From NCBI GenBank assembly GCA_051530055.1, contig CM121341.1:11448784-11512783 (forward strand): a stretch of DNA of 64,000 nt, read 5' to 3'. Origin of the DNA: Neoechinorhynchus agilis. Taxonomy: Eukaryota; Animalia; Acanthocephala. The position numbers were made by a program, and so were the translations under genes. Positions 14,201-61,107 of the stretch are shown here, one piece after another. Under the pieces are notes generated by a model that worked only from the letters and a program-made list of their open reading frames with translations, made no database searches and was not told the DNA's origin. Position 1 is the stretch's first letter, and each line of letters begins with the position of its first letter.

Positions 14201-17200
14201 ATTATTGTGGTTATTTGTATTGCTCAAAATTAAAATATATTCTTAGATTATTGATTGTAATGTCTCTTGGTACATGAAAGATCTTCTGAATACTTCACTT
14301 TAAATTCTTCGAGTTGATCTAAATTAATTTTGTCCTACTAATTTTTATTGAAATCAATTATTGCGGTTATTTGTATTGCTCAAAATGAAAATATATTCTT
14401 AGATTATGGATTGTAATGTCTCTTGGTGCATGAAAGATCTTCTGAATACTTCACTTTAAATTCTTCGAGTTGATCGAAATCAATTTGTTCTACTAATTTT
14501 ACTTGAGCTCAATTATTGAGATTATTTGTATTGCTCAAAATGAAAATATATTCTTAGATTATGGATTGTAATGTCTCTTGGTACATGAAAGATCTTCTGA
14601 ATACTTCACTTTAAATTCTTCGAGTTGATCTAAATTAATTTTGTCCTACTAATTTTACTTGAAATCAATTATTGTGATTATTTCTATTGCTCAAAATGAA
14701 AATATATTCTTAGATTATGGATTGTAATGTCTCTTGGTGCATGAAAGATCTTCTGAATACTTCACTTTAAATTCTTCGAGTTGATCGAAATCAATTTGTT
14801 CTACTAATTTTACTTGAGCTCAATTATTGAGATTATTTATACATTGCTCAAAATGAAAATATATTCTTAGATTATGGATTGTAATGTCTCTTGGTACATG
14901 AAAGATCTTATGAATACTTCACTTTAAATTCTTCGAGTTGATCTAAATTAATTTTGTCCTACTAATTTTACTTGAAATCAATTATTGTGATTATTTGTAT
15001 TGCTCAAAATGAAAATATAATCTTAGATTATGGATTGTAATGTCTCTTGGTACATGAAAGATCTTCTGAATACTTCATTTTCAATTCTTCGAGTCGATCT
15101 AAATTAATTTTGTCCTACTTATTTTACTTGAAATCAATTATTGTGATTATTTGTATTGCTCAAAATTAAAATATAATCTTAGATTATGGATTGTAATGTC
15201 TCTTGGTACATGAAAGATCTTCTGAATACTTCACTTTAAATTCTTCGAGTTGATCGAAATCAATTTTGTTGTACTAATTTTACTTGAGCTCAATTATTGA
15301 GATTATTTGTATTGCTCAAAATGAAAATATATTCTTAGATTATGGATTGTAATGTCTCTTGGTACATGAAAGATCTTCTGAATACTTCACTTTAAATTCT
15401 TCGAGATGATCGAAATCAATTTTGTTCTACCAATTTTACTTGAGCTCAATTATTGAGATTATTTGTATTGCTCAAAATGAAAATATATTCTTAGATTATG
15501 GATTGTAATGTCTCTTGGTACATGAAAGATCTTCTGAATACTTCACTTTAAATTCTTCGAGTTGATCTAAATTAATTTTGTCCTACTAATTTTACTTGAA
15601 TCAATTATTGTGATTATTTGTATTGCTCAAAATGAAAATATAATCTTAGATTATGGATTGTAATGTCTCTTGGTACATGAAAGATCTTCTGAATACTTCA
15701 CTTTCAATTCTTCGAGTTGATCTAAATTAATTTTGTCCTACTAATTTAACTTGAAATCAATTATTGTGATTATTTGTATTGCTCAAAATGAAAATATATT
15801 CTTAGATTATGGATTGTAATGTCTTTTGGTACATGAAAGATTTTCGGAATACTTCACTTTAAATTCTTCGAGTTGATCTAAATTAATTTTGTCCTACTAA
15901 TTTTACTTGAGCTCAATTATTGAGATTATTTGTATTGCTCAAAATTAAAATATAATCTTAGATTATGGATTGTAATGTCTCTTGGTACATGAAAGATCTT
16001 CTGAATACTTCACTTTCAATTCTTCGAGTTGATCTAAATTAATTTTGTCCTACTAATTTAACTTGAAATCAATTATTGTGATTATTTGTATTGCTCAAAA
16101 TGAAAATATATTCTTAGATTATGGATTGTAATGTCTCTTGGTACATGAAGGATCTTCTGAATACTTCACTTTAAATTCTTCGAGTTTATCGAAATCAATT
16201 TGTTCTACTAATTTTACTTGAAATCAATTATTGAGATTATTTGTATTGCTCAAAATGAAAATATAATCTTAGATTATGGATTGTAATGTCTCTTGGTACA
16301 TGAAAGATCTTCTGAATACTTCACTTTCAATTCTTCGAGTTGATCTAAATTAATTTTGTCCTACTAATTTAACTTGAAATCAATTATTATGATTATTTGT
16401 ATTGCTCAAAATGAAAATATATTCTTAGATTATGGATTGTAATGTCTCTCGGTACATGAAAGATTTTCGGAATACTTCACTTTAAATTCTTCGAGTTGAT
16501 CTAAATTAATTTTGTCCTACTAATTTAACTTGAAATCAATTATTGTGATTATTTGTATTGCTCAAAATGAAAATATATTCTTAGATTATGGATTGTAATG
16601 TCTCTTGGTGCATGAAAGATCTTCTGAATACTTCACTTTAAATTCTTCGAGTTGATCGAAATCAATTTTGTACTACTAATTTTACTTGAAATCAATTATT
16701 GAGATTATTTGTATTGCTCAAAATGAAAATATATTCTTAGATTATGGATTGTAATGTCCCTTGGTACATGGAAGATCTTCTGAATACTTCACTTTCAATT
16801 CTTCGAGTTGATCTAAATTAATTTTGTCCTACTAATTTAACTTGAAATCAATTATTGTGATTATTTGTATTGCTAAAAATGAAAATATATTCTTAGATTA
16901 TGGATTGTAATGTCTCTCGGTACATGAAAGATTTTCGGAATACTTCACTTTAAATTCTTCGAGTTGATCTAAATTAATTTTGTCCTACTAATTTTACTTG
17001 AAATCAATTATTGAGATTATTTGTATTGCTCAAAATGAAAATATATTCTTAGATTATGGATTGTAATGTCCCTTGGTACATGGAAGATCTTCTGAATACT
17101 TCACTTTCAATTCTTCGAGTTGATCTAAATTAATTTTGTCCTACTAATTTAACTTGAAATCAATTATTGTGATTATTTGTATTGCTCAAAATGAAAATAT

Positions 17201-17357
17201 AATCTTAGATTATGGATTGTAATGTCTCTCGGTACATGAAAGATTTTCAAAATACTTCACTTTAAATTCTTCGAGTTGATCTAAATTAATTTTGTCCTAC
17301 TAATTTTACTTGAAATCAATTATTGAGATTATCTGTATTGCTCAAAATGAAAATATT
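11222..17357. repeat. Tandem satellite, 156-bp unit, about 39-40 copies
   Basis: The unit ggattgtaatgtctcttggtacatgaaagatcttctgaatacttcac...cttagattat recurs at 11381, 11537 and onward (156-bp period). It is AT-rich with scattered point variants. Confidence 0.98.
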
Positions 17358-20306
17358 TTCAGCTTATACTTTGTTATAAAAATCCAAATTAAGTTGTTTG
17401 TTTCGTTAACAAAGATGAAAATTTCTTGGCAACATTTTTTTACCTATGAAGTTTTGCAAGATTGTCGATTTTTCTACATTCTTATCGGATTAATTGATTA
17501 ATGAAAGAATTCCAGATGCTATAAAATATTGTAATTGCATAATGTTAAAATTCCTGGAAATTCCCATTTTTGTTTCGAGGTAACGGGGGATAGAGATGTT
17601 CATTCGTTCTCACCGGAACTTTTATAAATTTTTGCATGTTCCCTAGATAATTTTAAGTCATACCAAAAAGATCAAAATAAATCTTTATGAAGTTCAATGT
17701 GTGATTTTTCGAACTAATAAACAATAATGTAGGTCGCATCCGTCATTCTGCATTACTTCTTAAATGTTCCTTAAGTAGGAATATCAAAACTTAGCTTTTG
17801 CGACTTTTACTACAAGAGCTGACTGTTTAGGATCTTATGCTCACTTTCTCATGTCAATATAACCAATACTAAAAATTTTAATTTCGAACCGCGGCGATTG
17901 ATTATTTCGAGATGTTTCTCGCTTCTGCTTTTATTTCTTAATAAATACATCGCATAGGCGACTTTATGAAGCAACTGGACAAACTGAATGGCGTATTTGA
18001 CTGTAAGAATGCTTAATAAAAGTCTAATCGCGCACAGATTGTAGTTTGTAAGATACAAACTGGTTGGTGTTGAAGTTTAGTTTCCCTAGGTGGACCATTT
18101 GACCAATTCAGTTTTAAATCGATACGAAATTGGGCCATAAGTCATGACGTTTGGCGATTAAGTCTTTAAGCGGGACTAGTTTTATCGTTTCGCTTAATTG
18201 CTGACACCCCTAATGGCCCAAAAGTGAAGAAAACTTTATGCTAGTTGATTGAATTGGTTGCTAATGAACCAGTGAACATATTTTTGGATCAGATCGTCTT
18301 TCAAAGAAATAGAATGGACAAAAGCTGAGTTTTATTGTTTATTTTGCCTCCATAAACATCACGGCGTAATTTCTGGGATGTAACATGTTTGTGAATCTAA
18401 GACCTCTGTTTGGTTCCCTCTTTGCACTTATTGTTTTAGCGAGTAAAGATTTCCCTAATGAGGCGCTCGAAAAGCTTATTATTTCACTCCCCTTTCTTCA
18501 AACCAGAACACATACTCGAAACTATAATTGGAATCTCAAACACCATCTCCTTTTGATGTCACTTCATGCTTATGACTAATACAAACAATATTCTTATCAA
18601 ATTTAGTCATTCTTGTTGCCAATTTTACACTTTTGTAAGATAATGGGAAGTTTCATTTTTAGTACAGGGTGACTCCATGTCCAGAATAGACTCTTTGTCT
18701 GTTAGGAATAAAAAGCGTGAACGGTTTCCTGCAAAAACTATAGACGAGAAATTCTGTTTAAATGGCCAATATTTTTTACTGGCTTTTCTATGTAAATGTG
18801 TGTTTGTTTCGACTTTATTTTCGATGGAATCTATGATACTTTACGGCTGAATGAATCTCGATCTACAATTACGATGCTTTTCTATGGATAGGAGATATCT
18901 GTGAATCGAATAAAGGTTTATGAATTTTTCGCCCATTCAAAACACTCGACATTTAATAATCAGAAAAGATACAGCGGCGTGTAAGATGTTTACGAGAATT
19001 TAAGTGCTAATTGCTTGAATATTTAATGAATAATTTGACGGAATTTGTCAATTAATGATTTTTTGTTTTCGGTGATCCACCCAATGTACCACTTATCCAA
19101 AATAATGATTATTCAGGTTCCCAGAAACAACGAGGTGTTTTTAGAAAACGTTGTCCATTCAAAGAAAAGGAATGAAACGCCTTAACCACCATTAATTCAC
19201 TGTTACAAGCCCGTGGTCATTTTTGGATTGTGGACAATAACTTAACTGTGTAGAACAAATAGTTGCTAAGTTAGAATTTCTTAATCCTTTTTCCATTTGA
19301 GGCGATTATATATGGAAGGATCAATAAAGAATTTGCAACATTTTTAAGGAGTAAAACTTATATGAATAAAATTGACATTTTTAACTAACAGGGCATTTTA
19401 TTCGTATGATAACGGATTTTTTAAATACTCAAAACCCATACAAAATCCCTGATAATGCACAGGTTAGGTATCCTGCTGAACAGTTTCTAAAACGCCTCCA
19501 AAAATTGTCTAAAAACACAACGCCTTCAATCGAGGGAAATCAATATCTTGCTATCATTTATAATCTTATGGGAATAGTGAGAGCGTCAGACTCGCTTGAC
19601 ATTCCGATTACATGGTGCCTCAACAATTCAGCATTGTGGTAGATGTCGCCGTCTCCGAAACTCATCGTCTCTCTCAACGGGTTTTGCATTCCGAAAAGTT
19701 TTGCTTTTGCTCCTACCTTCGCCCCCAGAGTTCGATTTTGAGTTCTTTTAAAATCATCAATGCTTAATCGTAATGTTTTCAATAAGCTCACTGCATAGGT
19801 AAAGGCATAGGTATGTTTCCTTTTGGATTTGTATTGAGTATTCCTTTGTTTTGGATGTTGGCATACTCTTGGGAAAATCCTGATTGCGAATTTAGAGTAT
19901 TATGACTGTAAGACGGGTTTTATGCAAGTTGCGAACGCAATCCTTACAACTTTCCTTCTATGTTGTTACTCAGCTAAAATAGTTAAGCATATGCGCAAAT
20001 TATGATCATTTAAAAATAATTTGAGTAGTTAAACGCACCACTTAGAACTCATAGAAAACCGTAGACATTTAACTCTTAAACAACTTTCATTTTGAGTGGT
20101 TATTTGGAATCGTTCACATTTTTCTTCAATCTCATAATAGCTTTAAATGTCATCTTTAAAAATGAGATGACCAAAATTGTACTGGAGATGTCTTCGTCCA
20201 AAATAAGAATTCGATCGATTTAGCGTTCCCTTAGATACCCATACGAATATTCATGCTTCCTATTTTTGTTATTCAGAACTCTTTTTAAAACGTCCGATTT
20301 CAGATA

Positions 20307-22347
20307 ATGGCCTTGGTAACCATCCAACGTACCTCAGTACTCAGCCTTCCTCCACTTGACGACGCTTCTCGAGCTCCGTCCGCATCAATGCTGGCGGCAT
20401 CAGACAACATATGGAAGCGGTGCCGCCGCGTTCAAAGTATCATCACAGAGAGTTACTTCGTGGTACGTGGAGCAGCTCTAATTCTCAGAAAAAAGGATTG
20501 TTACCTCAGTAAACACCAATCATCGCATTTACGTTCAGCCGACGACATGCGTGAACATCTTGAAGCCATGTTCAATCTCATTCATCCAATGGATACCGTC
20601 AGTCTCGCAGTTCGTGTCGAATCCTCAACTGCATCTCATGTCCGTTACGCGTTAATCATAAACCGAGTCGACAGGTTGGACACCGAGGAAGCTGGCGTTT
20701 TAGGAATTGACATAGTCAATGGTCGTGCGTCTGTGGGCCTCATTATGCCCGTATTTGCAGACTTAAATATTAAATTAAGTGGCGACGGAGGTTTAAAACT
20801 GTTTTCAAACGATGAACAACATTCGATCAAGCCAGTTACTGTCCAAGCGATGTGGTCGGCTTTTCAAAACTTGAACCGAGCTAGCGGACAGGCACGACTT
20901 TATAATTACTATCCGAATGGAATATCCCATACATGGCTCCATGTATACCGATCGCCACATCTCACGTCCGATCAAGTATTTGTTAACGAATGGAATATCC
21001 TTGAAGATGTTCTCTATCACCGTCAAGAATCTTTGTCTCACTACATCGATTGCGATGAACTCCATAAAAATGGACTGCTTGACACCATTCGTCATCGCCT
21101 TCGTGAAATCATGACCACTGTCGATCTGGACGATGTAACCAGCAAGTATTTAAGAGAACGGCTCGAGCAAGAACTTGATCAGGACTTGTCTCGGTATGGA
21201 AAATTCATAGACGATGTTATTCTTCAGGTTTTCGCCCATCTCGACGCTGCTTCTCAGATTGAGCCATGGCTTTATTTGGGATCAGAGTGGAACGCTTCTA
21301 ACTATGAAGAACTTAAAGCTCGTAATGTAGGTTACATTCTTAATGTTTCTCGGGAAATTGATAATTTTTACCCTGCTGATTTTGTTTACTTGAACATTCG
21401 AGTTAGAGATGACGAGCAAACTGAACTTATCCGAGAATGGAATAAAACTTTCCGATTTATTAAAGATGCACGTAGTCATGGAATGTCTTGCCTGGTTCAT
21501 TGTAAGATGGGAATAAGTCGATCTGCTGCAACTGTAATCGCTTTTCTTATGAAAGAGAATGAGATGAACTTGAACGTCGCGTTAAATCATGTATGCAGAA
21601 TTCTTTTTCTGTTGGCTGGGTAGCACAAGAAAAAGGGATTTATTAAAAGGAAGGAGGTCTTGTGTGAGACCAAATGACGGATTTATGGATCAATTAAAAG
21701 TCTACGAAGGCATATTGTTGGCTAATCGAGTTAGCCGCTTTCTGTTTCCTGACTACCGATCTGGAATTCATTTCCATACCTATTTCGATTGGTCAGCACG
21801 TCTAGGTCTCGAAGATACCTTTGACAGATTTTCTCAGAAAGTCAATCAAATTGAACCATTATCGGCTGACCACGAAAATGAATCCATAGATGGTGCTCAG
21901 TATGTCTTTAAAAGGTTTATGAATAGTTTGTTCGACGATCAACAAATACAATCCACAGCAAGCACCCTTCCGTCGAACGAGGAAGGTCCGGTGGTTGGAC
22001 GTAGGACTTTGGTGCCCCGCGTGACCAAACCCGACTCATTTTGGATCCGTTCATGTCGAAGCACAGAGCGAACCATGTCTGATTCGGATATCTCAGGTCA
22101 TAACTCGGTTGGACCTGCGAATTCTAAATCTGTCATTCGGTATTCAGGAGAAGTGAGGCGACGCGTGAATGACCTTGAAGCGAGGACGCGTGATGGAAGT
22201 GATTCTCAAAGAGATGAGGGAGGCATCAGTGCGGTTTCTTGTGTGGAATTGAACAGTATTAATCGAATTCAAAGTTTGGTTAAGCTTTACTCGAATGAAG
22301 AAAGATCAGAGCGGAGACTTGAGACGAGTGCAATGGCTGCGAGATGA
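20307..22347 (+). CDS. SSH: Slingshot protein phosphatase (SSH-N, DEK-C-like and dual-specificity phosphatase domains)
   Basis: MALVTIQRTS start, ESYFVVRGAAL, YLGSEWNASN, catalytic VHCKMGISRSAATVIAF and downstream RRSCVRPNDGFMDQLKVYEGIL. There is one frame change near 21580-21650, presumed to be an intron with an uncertain junction. Confidence 0.92.
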
Positions 22348-27680: not shown

Positions 27681-29948
27681 ATGGATTTGTCTGTATATTT
27701 CTGTTGGCTAATTTTTCTATTTACACCCACTGAAGCATGTCCCCTACTGCCGGATAGCCCATGCCATTGCGGAGTCCGGAATGACAGCACGTCCTACATT
27801 CAATGTTCGGGACTTGGACTTCGTGAAATTCCAAAATTCACGCTATCATTCACCTACGATGAATTACACCTGATCGATAATTATATCAGTCGAATCGAGG
27901 ATAATTCATTCTCGAAACTACGAGTACGCAAGATTTATTTGACCGGTAATCCGATTTCGTACGTCAGTAAATCGGCATTCAAGCCTCTCAGTCGACAGCT
28001 TGAGCTGCTTCATTTGGATGTTGTCACTCCCAGTCTCGACGAGGATGATTTGGACGAAGAACCGATCACTTCTATCGATACGACAACTCTTGCATTCCTA
28101 TGTTTACCGAGGCTTGTAAATATCCGTCTGAAAGGTTTTCAGCTGGAACGATTACCCGGACTTTGTCCAAATCTTACAAGACTCACAAACGTCGCACTCC
28201 TGTCATGTGGTCTTCGTCTCATCGACTATAACCACGGTCCATTTATCAATGTAAAACATTTGGACGTCTCGCTAAACCCGCTTCTGGAAACAGTGCCCAC
28301 TTCTCTGTTTCCAAACATAGAATCACTTAATCTAAGTGGAAACGCCATTAACCAACCAATTGAAAACTCTTCGATGTCCACTGTTAAAACTCTCGACTTA
28401 AGCAAGAATGGAATCGATAAATGGTTGCTGCCGGAATTAAGTAATCTTGAGCATTTAATACTAGACAAAAACCGCCTCACAATCCTTGATCAAACTCCAA
28501 TCTACACAAATCTCAAAACGCTCTCTGTGAGGCACAACAAAATTTCAACTGTTTTTAAATCATTTTCATCCAAACTTCCGAATCTACACACACTCGATCT
28601 ATTTGATAACCAACTGGTCAACTTTGATTGCCAATTCACCAATCCCAAAATCGAAAATCTTAATCTTGGATCCAACCATCTTACAGTCGCTCCATCTAAT
28701 CTTCCCATAACGATTAAATCCCTGGACATCTCAAACAATGTTATCTGCTCATTTTCAGCCCCGATAGTACATTCTTTTACACGGATAAATGATATTTTCG
28801 TCCATGATAATCCAATATTTTGCGATTGCAACATTAGGTGGCTCAAAATCGAACTTATGAGACGAAAAATTAAAGGAGTCAAATGTACGTTGCCCATTAG
28901 GCTCAAATCAATGGATTTGATTAATCTTACGGACACACAATGTGTTCCAGAAGTTCCAGCATGCGTCCATCTTGCTCATGGTCCGTATGTGAGAATAAAA
29001 GAAGACTTCGTGGAACCTCATTCAAGTAACGAAACTAGTGAGATAACCGAGAGGACAGAGACGCCTCGGGAAAAGTCGAATCTTCCGTCAATATCCTCAA
29101 TTACTCTTCATTACATCTCATCTTACGACACGATGAACCGTCCCAGAAAGTCTATTCTCGTCAATTGGAAACTTCATTCTTATAAGAAAGTTAGAGGTAT
29201 TCGCGTTAGTATAGTACCAAGACAGATTAACTCAAAAAGCTCAGCAAATCTTTTCCAATATTCCACAGTCTTACCGAGTTCATCTAGACATTTCGTAATT
29301 CATGGCGTAAAACCCGATGTGGTCTATACAATTTGTGCTGAGCCTCTCGGTCATGTAGAATCATATGGTAAAATGTGCAAGGATCTTAGAACGATTGGTG
29401 AGAGCAATGTCCACGCTGCAGCCGAAGTAATAAAAGCTCCACTTGGTGAAGTGAACACAGTGGACGCTAGAATGTTAATTGCGGCTTCAATCATGATTGG
29501 AAGTGTTCTCGTGTCTTTGTCTCTATTAATTCTATTCATGGCATTTTCTAAACCTCGGAAACGATCAATAAAGTCTCCACTTATGAAAAAACTTCAAGGA
29601 AATCAGTATTTGACAAACACGAACCTACAAATGATCACATCGTCTGCAATGGCAGGTGCTCATTTTGACGATCGCGACCGCCTGATGGATTATTTTTCAT
29701 GCCATGGCGGACATTTCTTATCCCCACATACCATAAGTCCTAATGGAGGAGGAACGTGCTGTTGTAGTTGCAACTTTCAGCCAATCACACGACTACACGA
29801 CGAAAAATCTTCTTCTGAAATTAACCAGCAAAATACAACTGATACAAGGATAACCAGTGCTCTTGGTGGACGGCACCTCTATCATGAGATTGCCAATGCA
29901 TGCTCACTTGAAAATGAACACCATTCCGCCGAAAGTGATGTTGTGTAA
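27681..29948 (+). CDS. Single-pass LRR-LRRCT-FN3-TM receptor (FLRT/ELFN-like architecture), intronless
   Basis: 755-aa ORF: signal peptide, LRRNT CP...PCHC, many LxxLxLxxN repeats, LRRCT NPIFCDCNIRWL...KCTLP, FN3-like VNW...GVKPDVVYTICAEP, TM MLIAASIMIGSVLVSLSLLILFMAF and a cytoplasmic tail. Confidence 0.9.
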   Translation: MDLSVYFCWLIFLFTPTEACPLLPDSPCHCGVRNDSTSYIQCSGLGLREIPKFTLSFTYDELHLIDNYISRIEDNSFSKLRVRKIYLTGNPISYVSKSAFKPLSRQLELLHLDVVTPSLDEDDLDEEPITSIDTTTLAFLCLPRLVNIRLKGFQLERLPGLCPNLTRLTNVALLSCGLRLIDYNHGPFINVKHLDVSLNPLLETVPTSLFPNIESLNLSGNAINQPIENSSMSTVKTLDLSKNGIDKWLLPELSNLEHLILDKNRLTILDQTPIYTNLKTLSVRHNKISTVFKSFSSKLPNLHTLDLFDNQLVNFDCQFTNPKIENLNLGSNHLTVAPSNLPITIKSLDISNNVICSFSAPIVHSFTRINDIFVHDNPIFCDCNIRWLKIELMRRKIKGVKCTLPIRLKSMDLINLTDTQCVPEVPACVHLAHGPYVRIKEDFVEPHSSNETSEITERTETPREKSNLPSISSITLHYISSYDTMNRPRKSILVNWKLHSYKKVRGIRVSIVPRQINSKSSANLFQYSTVLPSSSRHFVIHGVKPDVVYTICAEPLGHVESYGKMCKDLRTIGESNVHAAAEVIKAPLGEVNTVDARMLIAASIMIGSVLVSLSLLILFMAFSKPRKRSIKSPLMKKLQGNQYLTNTNLQMITSSAMAGAHFDDRDRLMDYFSCHGGHFLSPHTISPNGGGTCCCSCNFQPITRLHDEKSSSEINQQNTTDTRITSALGGRHLYHEIANACSLENEHHSAESDVV

Positions 29949-43465: not shown

Positions 43466-45388
43466 ATGACCATTCTGTCTATTGTGAAAGCGTCGCTCGT
43501 TCTAATTCTCGGATTAAGCATTTGCTTTGGAAATGATGGGCTAAATCGTTGTTCACTTCAATACCAAAAATACGACGCAGTGTACATTGTGTGCCCAACA
43601 ATTAAATCCAGCAAGTCGCTATCAAGTGTTTTGAGCAGTATAGAAACAAAAAGATCAATCAATCGAATAAAAATAGAGTTAGCTTTTTTCTATGATATTG
43701 TAAACAGTAACGATCACATCATCCCCGTCGCTGCAGACGTATCAATATTTTGTAGAAGAAATCAAGATGAGATTATTACCATCACGAGATCTCTTATGCA
43801 TAAATTCATTTATTCTAGAAGGCTTCAAATCAAAAACGCAAGATTTGGATATATCGAGGATGATGCATTTAAAGGCTTTTACAATCTGAACGATCTCGAT
43901 TTGAGCGAAAATGGTTTGTGGCAGTTGGGATCAAATATGCACGTCGATCTTCGCAATCTTCAATCCTTACACTTGTCGCATAATAGTTTAAGTAATGACT
44001 GCATCAATGTTGTCGAGAGGATGAAAATGTTGAAGGTTTTAGATTTGTCCAATAATTTAATTGGGCGATTCGTGCTAACCGATGAATTCAACTTTGATAG
44101 ACTGGAAAATATACGGATCACAGATAACCTTTTAAATGAGATAAATTTAAGTCGATTGGCTAAACTTAAGAATCTTAAAATTCTAGAATTTTCATACCAA
44201 CGAGATTTAAACCAATTGTTCAAAGATGAATTTCAATTCGAAAAATTGATGAAATTCGCTGTACACGGCCGAATCCCTCGACGTTTGGATTCGGGAATTC
44301 TAGCCAGAATGCCAGAAGTCAAACTTGTGAAGATATTTGGTTCGAATCTCAAAGAAGTTCCACGTGGAAACAATCGGACTGAGATGTTAATTCTAAGAAG
44401 AAATCGCATAGAAATAATCAAGTGTAACAGCTTTGTTTCGTGGATGAATGTTAGACAATTGGACCTGTCATGGAACAGAATCACACAGATATCCGAAGTT
44501 GCATTTTATCCGCTGAAAAAACTTGAAATACTTAACCTCGGGCAAAATAAGTTGTACTTGCTTCCATCGGGAATTTTTCGAAACAACGAATTACTTGATC
44601 AACTTATATTAACAAATACAAAGTTATCTGTCCTCCAGGAAGATCTTTTTAAAAACGTGAAACATTTGCGGTTCCTGGACGTGTCCCAAAATTCACTGAG
44701 AGGCATGGTTTCAGATTCACTGCATTCTAAAACGATCGATTATTGTCTTGTAAAACATAATCCCTTTTATGTTCTAATATACGATAAAAATAACATTGGG
44801 GATACACTTTTTACGTTGCATGATCTTGCAAAATATATGCCTGAACCGACACGATTGGCTGCTAATGTAAACGATGAGATTACAGTCTATAATGTTTCAA
44901 CAAATTTTACTCTACTAACATGGAAAAATTTGACCCGAATACAAGATGTCCGATTGTTTATCCATGGCAATGCGTTCTCAGTCGATTTGAGTCATAATGA
45001 GATATCCGCAATCAATTACGACGATTTTCAAGACTTGAGAAATCTTGAATTTCTTTGTTTGCAGTTTAATCGGATTCAGAAAATAACTCCTAGGGCATTT
45101 AGAAACACTCCTCGGTTAAAGATGCTCGACCTTGCCAATAATCGATTGAAAGATATAGACGATTTTTTCTTATTTTTCGGTCTTGATCAACTCATCTTTC
45201 TTCATATGGCAAATAATGGATTCCCGTTCTTTCCATCCCATCATTTGTGTGAACTGAAGAGTTTGCAGATTCTTAATATTTCCAGCAATCCGATACGTGA
45301 ATTTTACAGTAAACCTTTCAAAACTCTTCAATCTTTGCATACAATTGGAATCTATAATACAAGTATAGAAACAATTTACGATTTCTAA
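43466..45388 (+). CDS. Secreted leucine-rich-repeat protein, intronless, no TM or TIR (possibly a truncated receptor ectodomain)
   Basis: 640-aa ORF with a signal peptide and two blocks of LxxLxLxxNxL repeats. It ends at a stop right after an LRR, with no Cys-capped LRRCT or hydrophobic anchor. Confidence 0.85.
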   Translation: MTILSIVKASLVLILGLSICFGNDGLNRCSLQYQKYDAVYIVCPTIKSSKSLSSVLSSIETKRSINRIKIELAFFYDIVNSNDHIIPVAADVSIFCRRNQDEIITITRSLMHKFIYSRRLQIKNARFGYIEDDAFKGFYNLNDLDLSENGLWQLGSNMHVDLRNLQSLHLSHNSLSNDCINVVERMKMLKVLDLSNNLIGRFVLTDEFNFDRLENIRITDNLLNEINLSRLAKLKNLKILEFSYQRDLNQLFKDEFQFEKLMKFAVHGRIPRRLDSGILARMPEVKLVKIFGSNLKEVPRGNNRTEMLILRRNRIEIIKCNSFVSWMNVRQLDLSWNRITQISEVAFYPLKKLEILNLGQNKLYLLPSGIFRNNELLDQLILTNTKLSVLQEDLFKNVKHLRFLDVSQNSLRGMVSDSLHSKTIDYCLVKHNPFYVLIYDKNNIGDTLFTLHDLAKYMPEPTRLAANVNDEITVYNVSTNFTLLTWKNLTRIQDVRLFIHGNAFSVDLSHNEISAINYDDFQDLRNLEFLCLQFNRIQKITPRAFRNTPRLKMLDLANNRLKDIDDFFLFFGLDQLIFLHMANNGFPFFPSHHLCELKSLQILNISSNPIREFYSKPFKTLQSLHTIGIYNTSIETIYDF

Positions 45389-53450: not shown

Positions 53451-54236
53451 ATGCTGAACCAAAAGAGATTCGGCTCATATGCTCGATTACTTGGCATGAA
53501 GGTTAACCATAAAGTAAAGAAGCGAATGATCACTTATCACAAACGGTCTCTAAAAAGAATAGAACTTGCGATCATACGTGAATCTACGTTGCAAGTTGAT
53601 GAAATGAACATGGATGAATATTTAGAAGCCACAAATGAACAAAATCAGGCCGAATATAAGAAATGGCTGGTTGCTGATACAGAGTCACACTTTAAGTGGT
53701 TACTAAACCGTCCTGAACCCCCGCTAATCCTTACTAGCGAGAAGAAAAATGCGAAAAGGTTCAAAAATAGCGACAGATTCTGCATGTTTTTCGATAGGAC
53801 CGCTGTTTGCCGTGAAGGCCTTAACTGCAGTCGTCCCCATCGATTATTGAATATTGATCAATGCAACTGCCTTGTATTTTTGAATGTTTACAATGCACGG
53901 AACTCCCTGGATGAGCTGACCAATGAGTTTTTTAAAGGAGTATTGCAGGATTTCTTAGGAAATGTAAAAGAATTTATTATTTGTTCGAATGAATGCCCTC
54001 AGCTTAAAGGAAACATATACGTTGAATTCAGCAAAGACGTGAGTTTAAGGCAATCGTATGACAGAATGGCTGGAACTGTATTTATGGGTAAGGTACTTCA
54101 GTTGAGTTGGATTAGGGTTCTTCATTGGGGAAGATCCATTTGTGCGACTAAAATTAAAGGACGATTTTGTCCTCGAGGTGATCAATGTAGCTTTATTCAT
54201 CCCTATCCTTATGACCGTTGGAGAGCGCTCGTGTGA
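53451..54236 (+). CDS. ZRSR2: U2AF35-related CCCH-UHM-CCCH protein, most like ZRSR2/URP, intronless CDS
   Basis: Basic/coiled N-terminal extension, ZnF1 CMFFDRTAVCREGLNCSRPH, UHM with N..PQLKGNIYVEF, and ZnF2 CATKIKGRFCPRGDQCSFIH. The N-terminal extension and CPRG motif favour ZRSR2 over U2AF1. Confidence 0.7.
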   Translation: MLNQKRFGSYARLLGMKVNHKVKKRMITYHKRSLKRIELAIIRESTLQVDEMNMDEYLEATNEQNQAEYKKWLVADTESHFKWLLNRPEPPLILTSEKKNAKRFKNSDRFCMFFDRTAVCREGLNCSRPHRLLNIDQCNCLVFLNVYNARNSLDELTNEFFKGVLQDFLGNVKEFIICSNECPQLKGNIYVEFSKDVSLRQSYDRMAGTVFMGKVLQLSWIRVLHWGRSICATKIKGRFCPRGDQCSFIHPYPYDRWRALV

Positions 54237-55011
54237 TATGAAGGAAATCAAATAAAGTTCGCTATTATTCGTATGGAATTTAAACACTACTTGAGATGAT
54301 GAATACTTTTTTATCACAATGTAAGTACATTCTGTGGTTTTAATATCGAATGGGACAGTTTATTTTTTCTTAATATGTTTGATACTCGATCGCTAATATC
54401 GAGGTTAATTTAAAAAGGATTTTAATCACTTTATAGCGGACAACATATATGAAAATAACGTGTGCTTCAACTTTGTGTATTCAAAGCGTGAAGTTCGGGT
54501 GGAATCCGTTTGATTGAAATACGTAAGATTCATTCATTTAACGTATAATACATCGATTAAAATACAAATAAGAGAAAAATTTGAAGCCATTTTGAGATAA
54601 ATGAGGAGTTTCAAGTAGTACAAACTTTTTAAAAACGCCATTAAAATGATCGAAATATTAGTTTTTAAGAAGTAATGCACCGTCATAAATTCTTTGAGAT
54701 CATATTGATGTCCGAATATTGACTGAACTAAACTATTTTATTGTTCTGTTGAAAGCACCTAAGTACTTTATGATTCTCAAAACGGATTCTACCTTTAAGT
54801 TGCAACACCTAGTGAATCTTTTCCACAATATTTTTGCTCAATAGCAGAACTGTTAAAGCATCATTCTATGGAAGCTATGGAATCAGTGTAATAGTTCATC
54901 TACCAAACACTTCTGTTCCGATACTGATGTTAACCATTTGAATGATCTCGCAATAAATGATGGATTATATTAACAAATTTACAAAAAAATAGCATAGCAG
55001 CATTATACAGG

Positions 55012-58000
55012 TCAGTTGCATTGTTGATAAATGGAAGATTGAAGTATCGAATGGCGAGTTTGATCTCGGAATATTATTGCCAATTTCTTATAATTTTCTT
55101 GATTACAATTCTTTTTTTCATTTTGTTGTAACAATCGCTTCTTAGCAGCGTCAACGTAGGTTTGGCTTAGCATAGCACTCGATCTTTTCCTACTTCGTTT
55201 CATGGTTCTCCTGTTGGCCTTCTCGTTAACCAGCGCTTGTTTTATGAGTAGAAGCATTTCTTTGGTACTATTGGTAGCCAAAGACAAAGGAGATTCATTA
55301 AAACTGGTTAACAGATTGATTTTCGCTCCATATGAGACGAGCAACTTTGCAGCAGCGCAGTTATTGTTTCTGATAGCGAAGATCAATGGAGTTGCTCGGT
55401 CATTGTTTGTTGTGTTTACTGAAGCTCCATGATTTACAAGTAAATCAATACACTCAAGACTGTCTACTTCGGCAGCCAAATGAAGTGCTGATGCACCTTC
55501 TAGATTATAGTTGTATCCACTGGTAACAATGTCCACTTTAGCTCCTAGTGCTATAAGACATTCCACAGCTGAAACGGAATCTCCAAGTACCGCTTGTTGA
55601 AGAGGAGTCCGGCCATAAGAATCGACTGCATTCAAGTTGGCAAATCCTTGAGAGAGTTCAACCATAATTCGTACGATTGCTGGAAAATCGGAACTTGCGG
55701 CAATGTGTAAAGGAGTTCTCTGAAGTTTATCTCGACATTTACATAAGGCTGGGTATTTAACAAGTAATAGTTGTGAACACTGGATGAGTTTTTGATGGGC
55801 TGCCAGATGAAGAGCGCTTTCTCCGTTACGTTCATTCACACAGGAAAGCATTTTGAACGCAAGGCGAGAATTCTTAGATCGTTCAGACATTTCGATTGTT
55901 TCGCTAAGTCTTGCTGCCTTATCCTGGTCTATTGAATGAGGACAATTAAGTATTGAGCATACAAGAGCACGTTCATTTTCTAGAAGTGAACGAGTTGCTT
56001 CGTAGTCGATATCTGCTTGTGTCCAAAGACGAAGAAGGCTTTCTTTGATTAAAGAAAACGTTTCTGTTATACTTTTCCTTGACCGTTTCGAGTCATCAGG
56101 ATGATCAGAGTTTGTGTAAGCTCTGTAACCCGTTCGTTTTCTGTTTTCATCGCAACTATTGGAATAATCGAGTCCGCTTATTGCAAAAGAGCACTTTAAA
56201 CTCTTTATGATAGCTTGAGTTCGAATAACTGCAATTAGAGAAATGAGCAGAATCCCACTCATAGCGCCAATACCGATTCCAATGAACATTCTATGAATCA
56301 AATGAGTTTTTGGCTGACTTGATTGTGCTTCCGCTAAGAAAATCGATCGACCGCCTTGAACAAGGGCTCGAACGTCCGTTAATTGTAAACCTGTAGGAAG
56401 GTTTCTTATAGCACGTATTCTATTGAGAGTATCTGTGATGGCACCATGCTCTGGAATTCGAAACAGAATTCGCACACAGTTATCATCTTCGTAAAGTTCC
56501 GAATCGCATTTTGTGACATTAATTTGCCCCAATTTACTTCCCTGGGGCTCAAATTTCTCTTCTAGAATCCACTTAAAAACATCCACAACACTGTCTCGTA
56601 TATTATGATTCCTATGATTGATCGATAGATTAAGTGAAATAATTGGATCAATTTCTTTTTCTAGAGATTCCCGCTTATATTCACAATGTTCTCCATAATA
56701 CCCATCGGAGCAGTCACATTGTCCTTTAAGACTACATCTTCCACCGTTCAAACAAGGGCACCAATGCTCCTCACAATGTTGACCACGAAATTCAAACGGA
56801 CATCGACAAGTGAATTCGTTACTGCCAAACGAAATGCAAGTTCCGTTATTGGCACATGGATAAATCGCACATGGATCGTTATTTTCACACAATTCTCCTT
56901 TATACCCAGGAAAGCAAATACACTTAAAGCCCGTCAAAGTACTAATGCAATTTGCTCCATTTTTGCACTTTGACTTTCCAACTGAACAAAAATCAAATGG
57001 ATCGTTACAAAGGTCTCCCTGATAACCTGGCGGGCATGTACATTTAATTTTTTCTGGGGATAATCGTGACATTTCCGATGAACATATGCCTCCATTCTTG
57101 CATTTGTATTCGTTTCCATCACATGGATCAACTTGAATCTCGCACTTCTTTCCTGTGAATCCACTTGGACAACTACATTGAAACGATCTGGATTCATTCA
57201 CGTACTCACATTTTCCGCCATTCTCACAATTCGAACACCCAGGAGCTCGAATCTGACAAAACGATCCTTCGAATCCATTGGGGCATTCACAGATTTCTTC
57301 ATACGTAAATTCGTCAAATCTACATTGCCCATCGTTTTTACAAGGATTGTCCGAGCAAGGACTTGTCCATTTTCTGCATTGTCTATCTTTTGTCCATCCT
57401 TTTTGACACTCACAGCGAAACGAACCAACGGTATTCACGCACATCCCGTTATTACTACATGGCTGACTCTCTTTACACTCGTCAACATCTTCACTGCAGT
57501 TTTGACCGGTCCAACCAATCAAACATGAACACTTGTACTCGTTTGCCAACATCATGCAGATTCCATCGTTTTGGCAAGGATTTCCGAGGTAACAGTGGTC
57601 TATGTATTGGCACCGATCACCATGACGTCCTAGTGGACAATCGCAAAAGATCTCTGTTTTGTTTTTCCGATATTGGCAGACCCCGCCGTTGCACACTTGC
57701 TCTGTACATTCCGCTGAAAATATATTTTCACAAAAATCTCCCTTGTAGCCTTAAAATTTCAATTCATGGAAAAAAAAGACAAATGGAAATTAAGCAAACC
57801 TGAAGGACAGAGACATTTAGCTTCGTATCCAGTTAATTCGGATCCGATCGGAATGCACCGACCTCCGTTAAGACAAACAGACAAATATGAATGATTTGTG
57901 GCGCATGGATTAATAAATTGGCACCTTGATCCAATAAATCCTGATTTGCAAATACAAATTGTATCCAGACGTTTCAGTCGTGTATCGTATCTACAGTCAC

Positions 58001-58106
58001 CATAATTTTCACAGTTATTTACATTGCATTTGGTCCATTTTTTTCGTCTGTGAAATTGAAGCGAATCGAAAATAGAAATTAAAAGGAAAAATCCCAAAAT
58101 GATCAT
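55012..58106 (-). CDS. Notch-like receptor: signal peptide, 11 EGF repeats, ~125-aa juxtamembrane domain, TM, ankyrin repeats; no LNR or RAM
   Basis: Exon 1 (58106 to ~57800) is joined by a ~50-nt GTTTGC...TTTTAAG intron to the 894-aa ORF. I counted 11 six-Cys EGF units (one cbEGF DVDEC). TM MFIGIGIGAMSGILLISLIAVI; Notch-type ANK motifs GESALHLAA, RTPLHIAAS and GASALHLAAEV; NLS-like RRTMKRSRKR. Confidence 0.85.
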
Positions 58107-59344
58107 CTAAAAATGTAGTAGAATTTTTCATTCTCTTCTGCGGAAATAAGAAATTTTTTACATATTCTCGTCATTGAAAAATATGCTAGAAAAATACATA
58201 GTTTTGGGAGGAGTTCTAGGCTAGTTTATAAGGCAAAGCACAATCTTACTTTCCGTGATGCTGATTGGTTCCATAAACAATTAAGATAATTTTACGATTT
58301 ATTTTGTAACATAAGTAATATTCAATATTTTGCATGCTACTTGTAATTTATGTGTTCGAAAATTAACATAGGTTACAGGCGCTATGTGTTTGCTTTTAAC
58401 CTTCATGATAAAATTTTATTGGGTTGAAATTATCGAACGCTAACTAATTTGAGATTATAAATTTTTAATTTAAAAATGGAGCTGCTTTTTTAATTAGATT
58501 AACTTATTTTCTGCAAATATTTTTAAATTTAAAAAAAATTGAGTTTTTTCCAATTTGCAATAGCGACGCCCAAACACTAGTAAATAGTGAGCCGCAGTCA
58601 GTAATGATCGACAGGTACTTAACAATTTCCTTACGTAATAAGCGTACAAATTAACCACTTAAGTTTTAGGCTGGTAAGTTGTGCTTAAGGATTTTTATTG
58701 TCTTGATATGTCAAGCTTTATTTCTCGCATAATTCGATGACCCTAAGTACAACAATCTCAGGTCGATTCCCACATAAAGGAAAAACACACGTTGCGTCAT
58801 AAAAGAGGCATATTGAACAAATGGAATTTTTTTGATATGGTACGAAATCAAGAAATTAAATTCATCAATGTTCCACATTTATATAAGACGTGTGCTTGCT
58901 AATAACAAAAATTGACACTTTTCAGTTATAATTATCACAAAATTTCACGATTGTTCGAAGCGTGCAAATACTTTTCACACAAGCCAATAGATTTCTGTTT
59001 TTCTTGCAAGAACATTTCGGTGCACGTTATAGAAGTAACGCAATAGTGATGATGTCGTTTTAAAATTTAATGGAAAAATTAAAAGTATTTTAGGCGACAG
59101 CAATTTTATTAGCTATAAAAGTACACGCTTCGCACATTTTTAACCAATGGATTCCTTCATTTATTAATCAACATTCCAAGAAAATTCATTAATAAATTAC
59201 GCACTTACAAGATAGGAAAGCAATGAACTTTTCGTTAAAATGCGTTGAATCCTCATTCGATCATTAAAGTAAAATTTTGTCTTGATTAGCATCCACCTGT
59301 ATCAATTTAAATTCTTCCACTTTGATTAACGCTAACAGGTCTAC

Positions 59345-61107
59345 TTTTTTTTAATATAAATTTTTTTATTTTATTTTAAACCTGTATAATTTTTGAAATT
59401 CAATCAATCTTAATTTCTCGACAATTAACACACTCACCACCTCCCGCCGAATTCCAGCTTTTGTCCTTCCTCGACCGTCGCCATTACGCTGGCAGCATTG
59501 CCCCGTTGTACTGCTAGCGAGATATTTTGTCGAAGGAATACGCCTGCTCTTGAGTCTCCGGTTGCCTCTCTCAATTTCTTCGAGAGATCCTGGAGCAGAG
59601 AGAGTGCCGAGCTGCCGAGCGCTCCATACGTCTCTACCCCAAAGGGGACAAAATAGTGAGCCCTCGATAAGTGAAGATATTTCCGTATTTTCCTCCCTTC
59701 CGCTGCACTGGCGGCACCACCGGCGATTTCGAGGGAGTGGGGGATGTTGCTGGCTGCGAGGGTATTCACACACGTGGCGTCCCAGAGAAGGCATTTGGCC
59801 TCCCGCCACGGGAAGACCGAAATTCCATCGGGCCTACGGCCGTCTAGTCTAAAGAGGTGGGCGGGTTCCAGGATGTTGGGGAAGTTCGCCGTTCTCAACG
59901 CCCGAGAAATTACGCTATCGATCTCAGAATCGCGTGAGAACCTTCCTCCTGACGTTCGGCAAACGAGACCGTATCGCCCGAAACCATCAACCAAAGACCC
60001 ACATCGACAGCGATGGGGCGTGCATATCGGGAGACCAAGTCTTAAGGATACTGCGATCCTCGTTACCTCGTCAGTAAGAAGAGTTCCCACTGATGCCAGA
60101 GGAACAGCCTCCAACCACGCCCCAGATTCTCGTGTTGAAACTGCCAACAGTCTAGCTCGGACGACCCCATCGCGAGAACCGGAAAGTAGAGAGCTGTGAG
60201 CTCTCGCGACAAGAGGTCCGTCCCAGATCGACTGTCTGAGGCCATTCACGGGAACATGGTTAGCGCCTGTCTGCTGGCACCATTCTTCAACCGCCACCAC
60301 GAAATCCCGGTCAAGACAGAACTTTTCCTTCAAAATGTTCTTCGAGACTGGTAGGCTCCCCTCAAGCAAGGTCTATTAGCGCCCGAATTCCCAATCCCCC
60401 AGACGACACAGGCAAAGAAGCTTGTCGCCACGCCTCATCTGAGAGCTGGACATTTAAAATACGCTCGAGGCATGCCCTCACCTTGCCGTCGAGCTTAGCC
60501 AATCCTTCCTTATGTTTGAAAAATGTTGCTGTGCGAACCTTGTACAATAATTTGGGGATGAAGAGCGCGTTCTTTATGAGAAACAAGGCTTCATGAGCCG
60601 AAAGAGCGCTAACCCTATCGCACAGCAACGAAAGTTTCGGTATGATATGACCGATCTCATCTTCCACATTTGAATCGAAGACGCAACTGCCCAGGAGGCT
60701 GAGTGGCTCCCGAGTCACGAGTTTCAGACCTGGAGCTACGGCCTCGAACCCAGCCATTAGTTCTTTGACTTTGGCGGCGTCTCCAATATTCAGTACAAAG
60801 AGCTCACATTTTCCAGCATTAAGCTCAATGCCCATGCCCCCCGAACATCCCCGTCCGCAAGCTTCGAAGCGACACGCTCAGTCAGTGATCGTTTTGAAAA
60901 ACGGCAGCGAAACTCTTCCTTCGTGCGTCCCTTACGAACCTCGCGGAGATTCCTTTCAAAATCGTTAAATATTTGTTCAAAGGAGGCTAACCTTTCCTTG
61001 ATTGTTGATGTCAAAGACACCCCAGAATCACCGCATGCCCGTTTAATGCGAGAAAATCTAGTTTCTTTGATCGCCATCCTAAATCCATAATCACAGTCTT
61101 TTTTCAA
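59345..61107 (-). mobile_element. CRE-like non-LTR retrotransposon, 5'-truncated, RT core internally deleted, A-rich 3' end
   Basis: GC-rich island. KLADGDVRGA abuts GIELNAGKCELF at ~60840. It continues with W.QASLPV..GGLG, a C-x-C knuckle, the RLE motif RPD...WDATC...K..KY and QRGNAASV, then an A-rich tail ending near 59345. Confidence 0.9.

What the first reader, a model, noticed from the sequence alone, without database searches (positions are those of the whole stretch)
55012..58106. Notch-like receptor with no LNR shield and no RAM motif
Seen: signal peptide, 11 EGF repeats, then directly a ~125-aa juxtamembrane region with only two Cys (none of the three six-Cys LNR modules), a TM helix, a membrane-proximal segment with no WxP motif, Notch-type ankyrin repeats and a basic NLS. 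No obvious PEST tail. The EGF-to-TM part lies in one open exon, so LNR exons cannot be hidden in introns. Established: canonical Notch, including short nematode LIN-12/GLP-1, uses LNR plus HD to hide the S2 site, and the RAM WxP motif gives high-affinity CSL binding. Inference: this is a non-canonical Notch-derived receptor. It could be constitutively cleavable, gated only by an SEA-like domain, or signal independently of CSL.
Basis: partly seen in the sequence, partly recalled or inferred. Interest (0 to 1): 0.78.

Follow-up and report, generated by a model that had tools for sequence, protein, structure and literature searches.

The report
Notch-shaped receptor lacking LNR and RAM
A thorny-headed worm (Neoechinorhynchus agilis) expresses a membrane receptor laid out like Notch (EGF repeats outside, ankyrin repeats and a nuclear signal inside). 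It lacks Notch's LNR safety catch and its RAM docking motif, and has a small SEA-like domain next to the membrane; descent from Notch is plausible but not shown.

Summary
A two-exon gene on the minus strand (58106-57800 and 57749-55012, with a 50-nt GT-AG intron) encodes 1014 aa. The product is identical to NCBI ACOME3_002686 of Neoechinorhynchus agilis.

Spliced 3.1-kb contigs in four runs show one mRNA form and no extra exon.

Layout:
- signal peptide
- 11 EGF repeats
- a 130-aa juxtamembrane (JM) domain
- a transmembrane helix
- a 128-aa linker
- six clear ankyrin repeats, with room for a degenerate first one
- a basic NLS

Pfam finds no LNR, NOD or NODP, and there is no WxP anywhere in the tail.

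New findings:
- An exhaustive search of 1.84 billion proteins finds one relative of the JM and linker. It is an intronless paralogue about 2.7 Mb away (ACOME3_003368, 773 aa). It shares the JM-TM-ANK-NLS cassette but has no EGF repeats. The scan had already flagged that paralogue as note s1-039539.
- The JM is predicted to be a beta-alpha-beta-beta-alpha-beta sandwich. The best structural match is the SEA domain of Gpr126 (Z 8.7), barely above generic ferredoxin-like folds.
- "Notch-type" ankyrin repeats are not established. One profile test favours Notch. The reverse profile, the ML tree and language-model features say generic ANK.

Best reading (about 0.5): a lineage-specific Notch-like receptor gated by the SEA-like domain alone. 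An independent fusion is the main rival.

The parts
57800..58106 (-). Exon 1: start codon, signal peptide (58059-58106), EGF1 and most of EGF2
   Evidence: ORF and splice donor read directly. The spliced product equals the NCBI protein. RNA contigs end at 58106.
57750..57799 (-). 50-nt GT..AG intron (phase 1) inside EGF2
   Evidence: Sequence. Skipped exactly in the contigs of 4 runs.
55012..57749 (-). Exon 2: rest of EGF2 through the stop codon. One open frame holds EGF3-11, JM, TM, linker, ANK and tail.
56683..58028 (-). 11 EGF repeats (residues 27-458, intron included in the span). Only EGF5 has the calcium-binding consensus. EGF10 has one O-fucose consensus. There is no O-glucose consensus.
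   Evidence: Pfam EGF E=2.8e-42. Cysteine parsing.
56353..56646 (-). Core of the juxtamembrane domain (residues 471-568). Predicted b1-a1-b2-b3-a2-b4 sandwich, SEA-like. Two N-glycosylation sequons (NLS, NVT). No furin site and no GSVVV motif.
   Evidence: AF2 on the two paralogues: pLDDT 69.8 overall, core ~80-86. VIA top hit is the Gpr126 SEA domain, Z 8.7. No Pfam or PDB sequence hit. Motifs.
56293..56352 (-). 20-aa stalk between the folded domain and the membrane (residues 569-588), the candidate shedding site. Poorly conserved in the paralogue.
   Evidence: Alignment A1. Low pLDDT in the model. That it is cleaved is inference only.
56221..56292 (-). Transmembrane helix (residues ~589-612)
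   Evidence: Hydropathy maximum 2.36 at 592-593. Helix in both models.
55837..56220 (-). Membrane-proximal linker (residues 613-740). Basic cluster SKRSRKS at 656-662, 'RLWTQ' at 676-680 (56017-56031), no WxP.
   Evidence: Regex and comparison with 12 canonical Notch proteins. No Pfam hit.
55231..55836 (-). Ankyrin-repeat domain (residues 741-942), six recognisable repeats
   Evidence: Pfam Ank_2 E=1.5e-30. Colinear with Notch ANK 2-7 at 28-29% identity. Specificity tests.
55183..55212 (-). Basic NLS-like cluster RRTMKRSRKR (residues 949-958). Conserved in position in the paralogue (ARKRSRQ).
   Evidence: Sequence. Alignment.
54943..55011 (-). 69-nt 3' UTR
   Evidence: The contigs of three of the four runs (X1, X2, X4) end at 54943; the X3 contig stops at 54992.

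Best explanation
This is an expressed, lineage-specific Notch-like type I receptor of the acanthocephalan Neoechinorhynchus agilis.

Shown:
- The architecture is SP, 11 EGF, a ~100-aa alpha/beta juxtamembrane domain, a 20-aa stalk, TM, linker, ANK repeats and an NLS.
- LNR, NOD/NODP and RAM WxP are absent.
- A paralogue shares the JM-TM-ANK-NLS cassette.

Inferred, fold: the juxtamembrane domain is an SEA-like fold. It takes the place of the whole Notch negative regulatory region.

Inferred, mechanism:
1. A ligand binds the EGF array and pulls on it, or basal shedding occurs.
2. The stalk or SEA-like domain is exposed to a metalloprotease.
3. The membrane stub is then cut by gamma-secretase.
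4. The ANK-NLS fragment goes to the nucleus.
5. With no RAM motif, any CSL partnership would rest on ANK alone, or the fragment uses another partner.

Most likely origin: a much-diverged Notch gene that lost its LNRs and later duplicated. This is not proven.
For: - Gene model and identity to the annotated protein.
- Spliced mRNA contigs in 4 runs.
- Pfam finds EGF and ANK only.
- The JM length (131 aa from the last EGF Cys to the TM) is close to the 140-160 aa between the last LNR and the TM in canonical Notch.
- The JM model has a confident core and ferredoxin/SEA topology.
- The best of 48,161 chains is the SEA domain of Gpr126, Z 8.7. The juxtamembrane MAD12 of PCDH15 also appears, Z 6.6-6.7.
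- Published chimera work shows that SEA-like domains with a structured N-terminal neighbour can replace the NRR as ligand-dependent switches, while those without a neighbour are shed constitutively (PMC6586460; bioRxiv 10.1101/2024.07.10.602225).
- The paralogue P0240 conserves JM (39% identity), TM, ANK (37% identity) and NLS, which argues that the cassette is under selection.
- A two-sequence ANK profile ranks Notch ANK domains 1, 3, 4, 5 and 6 of 238.
- 4 of 6 repeats best match the positionally equivalent Notch repeat.
- 'RLWTQ' resembles the Notch 'RxW(S/T)xQHL'.
- An earlier scan note reports a presenilin gene in this genome. This is a lead only.
Against: - No sequence similarity between the JM and the canonical Notch HD, by sequence against profile or profile against profile (probability 0.4%).
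- Notch NRR structures are not among the top 50 structural matches, and Z 8.7 is only about 0.5 above generic ferredoxin folds.
- A Notch-ANK HMM does not prefer this protein over generic ANK arrays.
- The ML tree puts it outside the Notch ANK clade.
- Language-model features give generic ANKRD clusters.
- The diagonal-repeat result is matched by 3 of 25 controls.
- The EGF array has just one calcium-binding EGF and one O-fucose site, unlike Notch ligand-binding regions.
- No cleavage, ligand or nuclear partner has been observed.
- The presence of a canonical Notch, CSL or DSL ligands in this genome could not be checked.
Confidence: 0.5

Rival explanations
1. Independent invention. A lineage-specific SEA-like-TM-ANK receptor family, of which the EGF-less paralogue is the plainer member, acquired 11 EGF repeats in one copy by exon shuffling. 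It therefore mimics the Notch layout without descent from Notch. It may act as an adhesion or scaffolding receptor whose ANK domain recruits cytoplasmic partners, with or without proteolytic release.
For: - The JM has no relative outside N. agilis among 1.84 billion representatives and no similarity to the Notch HD.
- The ANK repeats behave as generic in the reverse profile test, the tree and language-model features.
- The paralogue has the cassette but no EGF or LNR.
- The EGF array lacks Notch-typical calcium-binding and glycosylation patterns.
- A phase-1 intron sits inside an EGF module.
Against: - To my knowledge, EGF-TM-ANK in this order with an NLS after the ANK domain is otherwise known only from Notch.
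- The forward profile ranks Notch ANKs on top.
- The AU test does not reject a clade with Notch (p=0.23).
- The RLWTQ motif.
- The JM length matches the HD.
- The comparison ANK windows were picked for likeness to the query, which biases the tree against Notch.
Confidence: 0.33
2. Constitutively processed or ligand-independent variant. Without LNRs, and with an exposed stalk, the receptor is shed continuously. Its output is then set by expression level rather than by ligand. The published transcriptome reports 'Notch signaling pathway' enrichment among size-associated male transcripts.
For: - By established knowledge, deletion of the LNRs makes canonical Notch ligand-independent.
- SEA domains without a stabilising neighbour were constitutively cleaved in chimeras (PMC6586460).
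- The stalk is poorly conserved and modelled with low confidence.
- The GO enrichment is mentioned in PMC12690905.
Against: - EGF11 abuts the JM directly and could act as the stabilising neighbour.
- Keeping 11 intact EGF repeats argues for ligand binding.
- The GO term in the paper is not tied to this gene.
Confidence: 0.12
3. Annotation or assembly artefact, or a decaying pseudogene of a canonical Notch.
For: The assembly is a hybrid draft (PMC12690905).
Against: - An intact 3045-nt frame.
- Identical spliced contigs in four runs, with only one conservative (I785V) and one synonymous difference.
- A conserved paralogue.
Confidence: 0.03

Closest known systems
Notch / LIN-12 / GLP-1 receptors
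   Same: - Type I topology.
- N-terminal EGF array.
- A juxtamembrane alpha/beta domain of HD-like length.
- A single TM helix.
- A ~130-aa linker.
- Six to seven ANK repeats colinear with Notch ANK 2-7 (28-29% identity).
- Basic clusters before and after the ANK domain.
- An 'RLWTQ' like the Notch pre-ANK motif.
   Different: - No LNR modules.
- No NOD/NODP signature.
- No furin S1 site.
- No RAM Phi-W-Phi-P.
- No PEST tail.
- Only 11 EGF repeats, with one calcium-binding repeat.
- The ANK domain is not recognised preferentially by a Notch ANK profile and lies outside the Notch ANK clade.
SEA / SEA-like juxtamembrane switch domains (Gpr126 SEA, PCDH15 MAD12, Trop2/EpCAM, dystroglycan)
   Same: - Predicted beta-alpha-beta-beta-alpha-beta sandwich directly before the TM helix of a type I receptor.
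- A structured N-terminal neighbour (EGF11).
- Best structural match is the Gpr126 SEA domain.
   Different: - No Pfam SEA hit.
- No GSVVV autoproteolysis motif.
- No furin site.
- The structural score is barely above generic ferredoxin-like folds.
- Those receptors lack an ANK-NLS tail.
Engineered LNR-less Notch and synNotch-type receptors with substituted switch domains
   Same: A recognition module, a minimal juxtamembrane switch, a TM helix and a releasable nuclear effector. The natural layout here resembles these designs.
   Different: Those are artificial and retain a Notch core or a defined transcription factor. Here nothing is known about cleavage or output.
ACOME3_003368 (P0240), the N. 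agilis paralogue
   Same: JM 39% identical, TM, ANK 37% identical and colinear, NLS in the same place. Same chromosome, about 2.7 Mb away.
   Different: - Intronless.
- In place of EGF repeats it has a ~125-aa Cys-rich N-terminus with no Pfam match.
- The linker is shorter and lacks the RLWTQ segment.
- It has a ~200-aa S/P/Q/Y-rich tail.

Membership tests
Notch receptor family | Signal peptide and extracellular tandem EGF repeats | tested here: met
   11 EGF repeats, Pfam E=2.8e-42.
Notch receptor family | Ligand-binding pair of calcium-binding EGFs with O-fucose/O-glucose consensus sites | tested here: not met
   Only EGF5 is calcium-binding. One O-Fuc consensus (EGF10) and no O-Glc consensus. 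This was consensus matching only.
Notch receptor family | Three LNR modules (PF00066) | tested here: not met
   No hit at E<=1 on the protein or E<=10 on the JM. No DGxDC motif, whereas every canonical comparator scanned except P0004 has 2-3. RNA shows no extra exon.
Notch receptor family | Heterodimerisation domain (NOD PF06816 / NODP PF07684) | tested here: not met
   No Pfam hit. hhalign against a canonical HD alignment matches only the TM. Profile-profile probability 0.4%. The fold class (alpha/beta sandwich) and the length are compatible.
Notch receptor family | RAM Phi-W-Phi-P motif shortly after the TM | tested here: not met
   No WxP anywhere in the tail. 11 of 12 canonical comparators have it.
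Notch receptor family | Notch-type seven-repeat ANK domain (orthology of repeats) | tested here: inconclusive
   For: 4 of 6 on the diagonal; RLWTQ. Against. Control windows reach the same diagonal score in 3 of 25 cases.
Notch receptor family | NLS flanking the ANK domain | tested here: met
   SKRSRKS at 656-662 and RRTMKRSRKR at 949-958, read directly.
Notch receptor family | C-terminal PEST / transactivation tail | tested here: not met
   The 56-aa tail is K/Q/N-rich with no Pfam hit. The paralogue does have an S/P/Q-rich tail.
Notch receptor family | ADAM (S2) and gamma-secretase (S3) cleavage; CSL/Mastermind complex | not testable with these tools
   Needs biochemistry. The presence of CSL and DSL genes in the genome could not be searched.
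SEA domain (PF01390) / SEA-like juxtamembrane domains | Sequence match to the SEA profile and the G/SVVV autoproteolysis motif | tested here: not met
   No Pfam hit. No GS[VI]V motif.
SEA domain (PF01390) / SEA-like juxtamembrane domains | beta-alpha-beta-beta-alpha-beta sandwich next to the membrane | tested here: met
   AF2 model with the core at pLDDT ~80-86. Top VIA hit is the Gpr126 SEA domain, Z 8.7. Confidence is moderate, because the alignment holds only two sequences.

The most novel reading that the evidence does not exclude
In acanthocephalans the canonical Notch receptor has been replaced by a small family of LNR-less, RAM-less receptors. In them a bare SEA-like domain is the only gate, and the recognition module is interchangeable: 11 EGFs in one copy, a novel Cys-rich module in the other. 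This would be a natural counterpart of synNotch design, and it implies CSL-independent or ANK-only nuclear signalling.
Probability: 0.25. Interest if true: 0.85.

Novelty: new variant of a known kind. Interest (0 to 1): 0.6.

Why it matters
The LNR-HD negative regulatory region and the RAM motif are treated as near-universal parts of Notch, even in the short nematode receptors.

A natural, expressed receptor that keeps the Notch outline but drops both would bear on two questions. It also has a sister gene that swaps the whole recognition module.

- **How little is needed for a force- or shedding-gated nuclear signal.** This is a live question for synthetic receptor design, where SEA-like domains are being screened as NRR substitutes.
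- **What happened to Notch signalling in a strongly reduced parasite lineage.**

If instead it is an independent fusion, it is a clear case of convergent assembly of a Notch-like architecture.

Tried and rejected
- **Word-indexed search with the whole exon-2 protein.** Hits were dominated by EGF proteins. It gave the species and the exact annotated protein, but no orthologue.
- **The same search restricted to residues 459-1014 and a PDB sequence search of the tail.** Both were swamped by multi-ANK proteins through summed repeat scores, so they say nothing about Notch affinity.
- **PDB sequence search of the JM and ESM Atlas features of JM plus linker.** Nothing found.
- **Single-sequence AF2 model.** pLDDT was 54, too weak. 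It was replaced by the two-paralogue model.
- **Foldseek against PDB and the ESM Atlas structure search.** Only generic ferredoxin-like folds, E>=1e-3.
- **N-terminal Cys-rich region of the paralogue against EGF and LNR.** No significant similarity.
- **Papers on acanthocephalan Notch.** Only GO-term mentions; nothing on this receptor.
- **Earlier scan notes for CSL, Delta, Hairless and SEA.** Nothing found.
- **Pseudogene or artefact reading.** Rejected.
- **Third word-indexed search.** I did not use it, because no query could bring an N. agilis canonical Notch or CSL into the top 120 rows.
Full report
**What is there**

- On the minus strand an ORF of 894 codons (55012-57696) continues upstream in frame to an AG acceptor at 57751-57750.
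- A second ORF (57759-58106) starts with a hydrophobic signal sequence and carries a GT donor at 57799-57798.
- Joining 58106-57800 to 57749-55012 removes a 50-nt GT..AG intron. The result is a 3045-nt frame whose 1014-aa product is identical to the NCBI protein 'hypothetical protein ACOME3_002686 [Neoechinorhynchus agilis]' (P0001).
- The window therefore comes from the acanthocephalan genome described in PMC12690905.

**Transcript evidence**

- Four runs of one study each hold a single ~3.1-kb contig that lies on 54943-57748 and 57799-58106 and skips exactly the intron.
- The runs are only guessed to be RNA. An intron-less contig, however, shows a spliced transcript.
- No contig brings any other sequence into the EGF-to-TM stretch.
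- The only differences are one conservative change (I785V) and one synonymous change.
- The contigs stop at the A of the ATG, which follows 'ttttag'. This could be a trans-splice acceptor or simply the 5' end.

**Anatomy (residues of P0001)**

- Signal peptide: 1-16.
- 11 EGF repeats: 27-458 (66 Cys).
  - Only EGF5 is calcium-binding.
  - One O-fucose consensus, in EGF10.
  - No O-glucose consensus.
- Juxtamembrane region: 459-588, with Cys517 and Cys527.
- TM helix: 589-612.
- Linker: 613-740, with one basic cluster and a single Trp in 'RLWTQ'.
- Six clear ANK repeats: 741-942.
- Basic cluster RRTMKRSRKR: 949-958.
- K/Q/N-rich tail: to 1014.
- Pfam reports EGF and ANK families only. LNR, NOD and NODP are absent even at E<=10 on the isolated juxtamembrane piece.
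- In a control set of 12 canonical Notch proteins, 11 show a Phi-W-Phi-P motif shortly after the TM. All but one of the canonical comparators scanned show 2-3 DGxDC LNR signatures. This protein shows neither.

**Relatives**

- An exhaustive HMMER search of residues 459-740 (JM, TM and linker, chosen to avoid the EGF and ANK repeats) against 1.84 billion representative proteins found only the protein itself and one other, P0240 (E=1.6e-10).
- P0240 is KAL7677123.1, ACOME3_003368. It is an intronless 773-aa gene on the same 19.4-Mb chromosome. It matches the earlier scan note s1-039539, about 2.7 Mb away.
- It aligns with P0001 from the start of the JM to the NLS: 203 bits, 32% identity over 494 columns. 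The JM is 39% identical and the ANK domain 37%.
- In place of EGF repeats it has a ~125-aa Cys-rich N-terminus with no Pfam match and no significant similarity to EGF or LNR modules.
- It also has a shorter linker and a long S/P/Q/Y-rich tail.
- The conserved unit is thus a JM-TM-ANK-NLS cassette, and the recognition module differs between the two copies.

**The juxtamembrane domain**

- Sequence methods find nothing:
  - PDB phmmer.
  - Pfam.
  - hhalign of the JM against an alignment of 12 canonical Notch HD regions, which matched only the TM.
  - A profile-profile comparison without the TM, probability 0.4%.
- Its length, 131 aa from the last EGF cysteine to the TM, is close to the 140-160 aa between the last LNR and the TM in canonical Notch.
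- A single-sequence AF2 model was weak (pLDDT 54).
- With the two paralogues as alignment, the model reached pLDDT 69.8, with the core at ~80-86. The topology is b1-a1-b2-b3-a2-b4, then a short stalk helix and the TM helix.
- Structural searches:
  - Against 48,161 PDB representatives, the best match is the SEA domain of zebrafish Gpr126 (6v55_A 371-506; Z 8.7, rmsd 4.8, 101 aligned).
  - It is followed within 1 Z unit by generic ferredoxin-like folds.
  - The juxtamembrane MAD12 domain of PCDH15 appears at Z 6.6-6.7.
  - No Notch NRR is in the top 50.
  - Foldseek and the Atlas give the same fold class.
- There is no furin site and no GSVVV motif.
- I read this as an SEA-like alpha/beta sandwich, at moderate confidence. 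That is the fold class to which the Notch HD also belongs, but homology with the HD is not shown.

**Are the ankyrin repeats 'Notch-type'?**

*In favour*
- BLASTP aligns them colinearly with Notch ANK 2-7 at 28-29% identity.
- A profile built from the two paralogues ranks Notch ANK domains 1, 3, 4, 5 and 6 among 238 proteins by best single domain. About 118 of those proteins are multi-ANK proteins with many possible registers.
- Four of six repeats score best against the positionally equivalent Notch repeat.
- 'RLWTQADIDYEA' before the repeats resembles the canonical 'RxW(S/T)xQHL(E/D)A'.

*Against*
- Raw single-HSP scores are as high for generic ANK proteins.
- A Notch ANK profile built without nematodes scores held-out nematode Notch at 117-144 bits. 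It scores P0001 at 80 and P0240 at 84, inside the generic range.
- The ML tree gives a 100/99 Notch clade that excludes the two paralogues. They pair with each other (100/99) and then with an unnamed multi-ANK window (96/81), on an unresolved backbone.
- 3 of 25 control windows reach the same diagonal score.
- Language-model features of the tail point to generic ANKRD clusters.
- The RLWTQ segment is deleted in the paralogue.

*Verdict*
- The AU test does not reject a Notch-plus-query clade (p=0.23).
- The result is inconclusive.
- The control windows were chosen for likeness to the query or to Notch, which biases these tests against a Notch signal.

**Mechanism**

- *Shown:* a type I receptor with a folded module next to the membrane, a 20-aa poorly conserved stalk, and an ANK-NLS tail.
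- *Inferred:*
  1. Ectodomain shedding at the stalk or SEA-like domain.
  2. Gamma-secretase cleavage of the membrane stub.
  3. Nuclear entry of the tail.
- Published chimera experiments show that SEA-like domains with a structured N-terminal neighbour can replace the Notch NRR as ligand-dependent switches. Those without a neighbour are shed constitutively (PMC6586460). An in vivo screen found many unrelated domains that work (10.1101/2024.07.10.602225).
- Here EGF11 abuts the domain directly, so either behaviour is possible.
- Without RAM, high-affinity CSL binding as in canonical Notch is not expected.
- An earlier scan note reports a presenilin gene in this genome (unchecked lead).

**Comparison and novelty**

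- The protein fails four tested defining features of Notch: LNR, NOD/NODP, RAM and PEST. It is inconclusive on the ANK domain. I therefore do not file it as a Notch family member.
- It works, as far as anatomy can say, like a minimal Notch.
- I rate Notch descent at roughly 0.55-0.6 and an independent fusion at about a third.
- I found no description of this receptor in the searched literature.

**What I could not do**

- I could not search the rest of this genome for a canonical Notch, CSL or DSL ligands. That is the decisive missing piece.

Noticed in passing
window 58104-58125 (minus strand): The mRNA contigs of all four runs stop at or within 1 nt of the A of the ATG (58105-58106), which is directly preceded by 'ttttag'. 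This may be a spliced-leader trans-splice acceptor or an unassembled 5' exon rather than a true cap site.
   Followed up: partly
L001:6001-8322 (CM121341.1, about 2.7 Mb from the window): The intronless paralogue ACOME3_003368 shares the JM-TM-ANK-NLS cassette. It has a novel Cys-rich N-terminus and an S/P/Q/Y-rich tail that contains an LPSY motif.
   Followed up: partly
window 59434-61107 (minus strand): A GC-richer block (0.43 against ~0.36) holds three consecutive frame-shifted ORFs (311, 157 and 105 aa) with no Pfam hit. It looks like a decayed repeat or retroelement remnant just upstream of the receptor gene.
   Followed up: partly
window 53451-54236 (+): A single-exon gene for a CCCH zinc-finger / Torus-domain protein (U2AF35-related type) converges on the receptor's 3' end. 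The two 3' ends lie about 700 nt apart.
   Followed up: partly
window 12001-18000: A very AT-rich stretch (GC 0.26-0.27) with strong negative AT skew (-0.12 to -0.16), unlike the rest of the window.
   Followed up: no
window 4019-5587 (-), 20307-21623 (+), 27681-29948 (+), 43466-45388 (+): Long single-ORF genes for a catalase, a Slingshot-type dual-specificity phosphatase and two leucine-rich-repeat proteins. Long intron-poor genes seem common here.
   Followed up: partly
window 55704 and 57430: Two differences between runs: T>C at 55704 (I785V, in ANK repeat 2) in one run, and G>A at 57430 (synonymous, T209) in two runs. These are probably alleles.
   Followed up: partly
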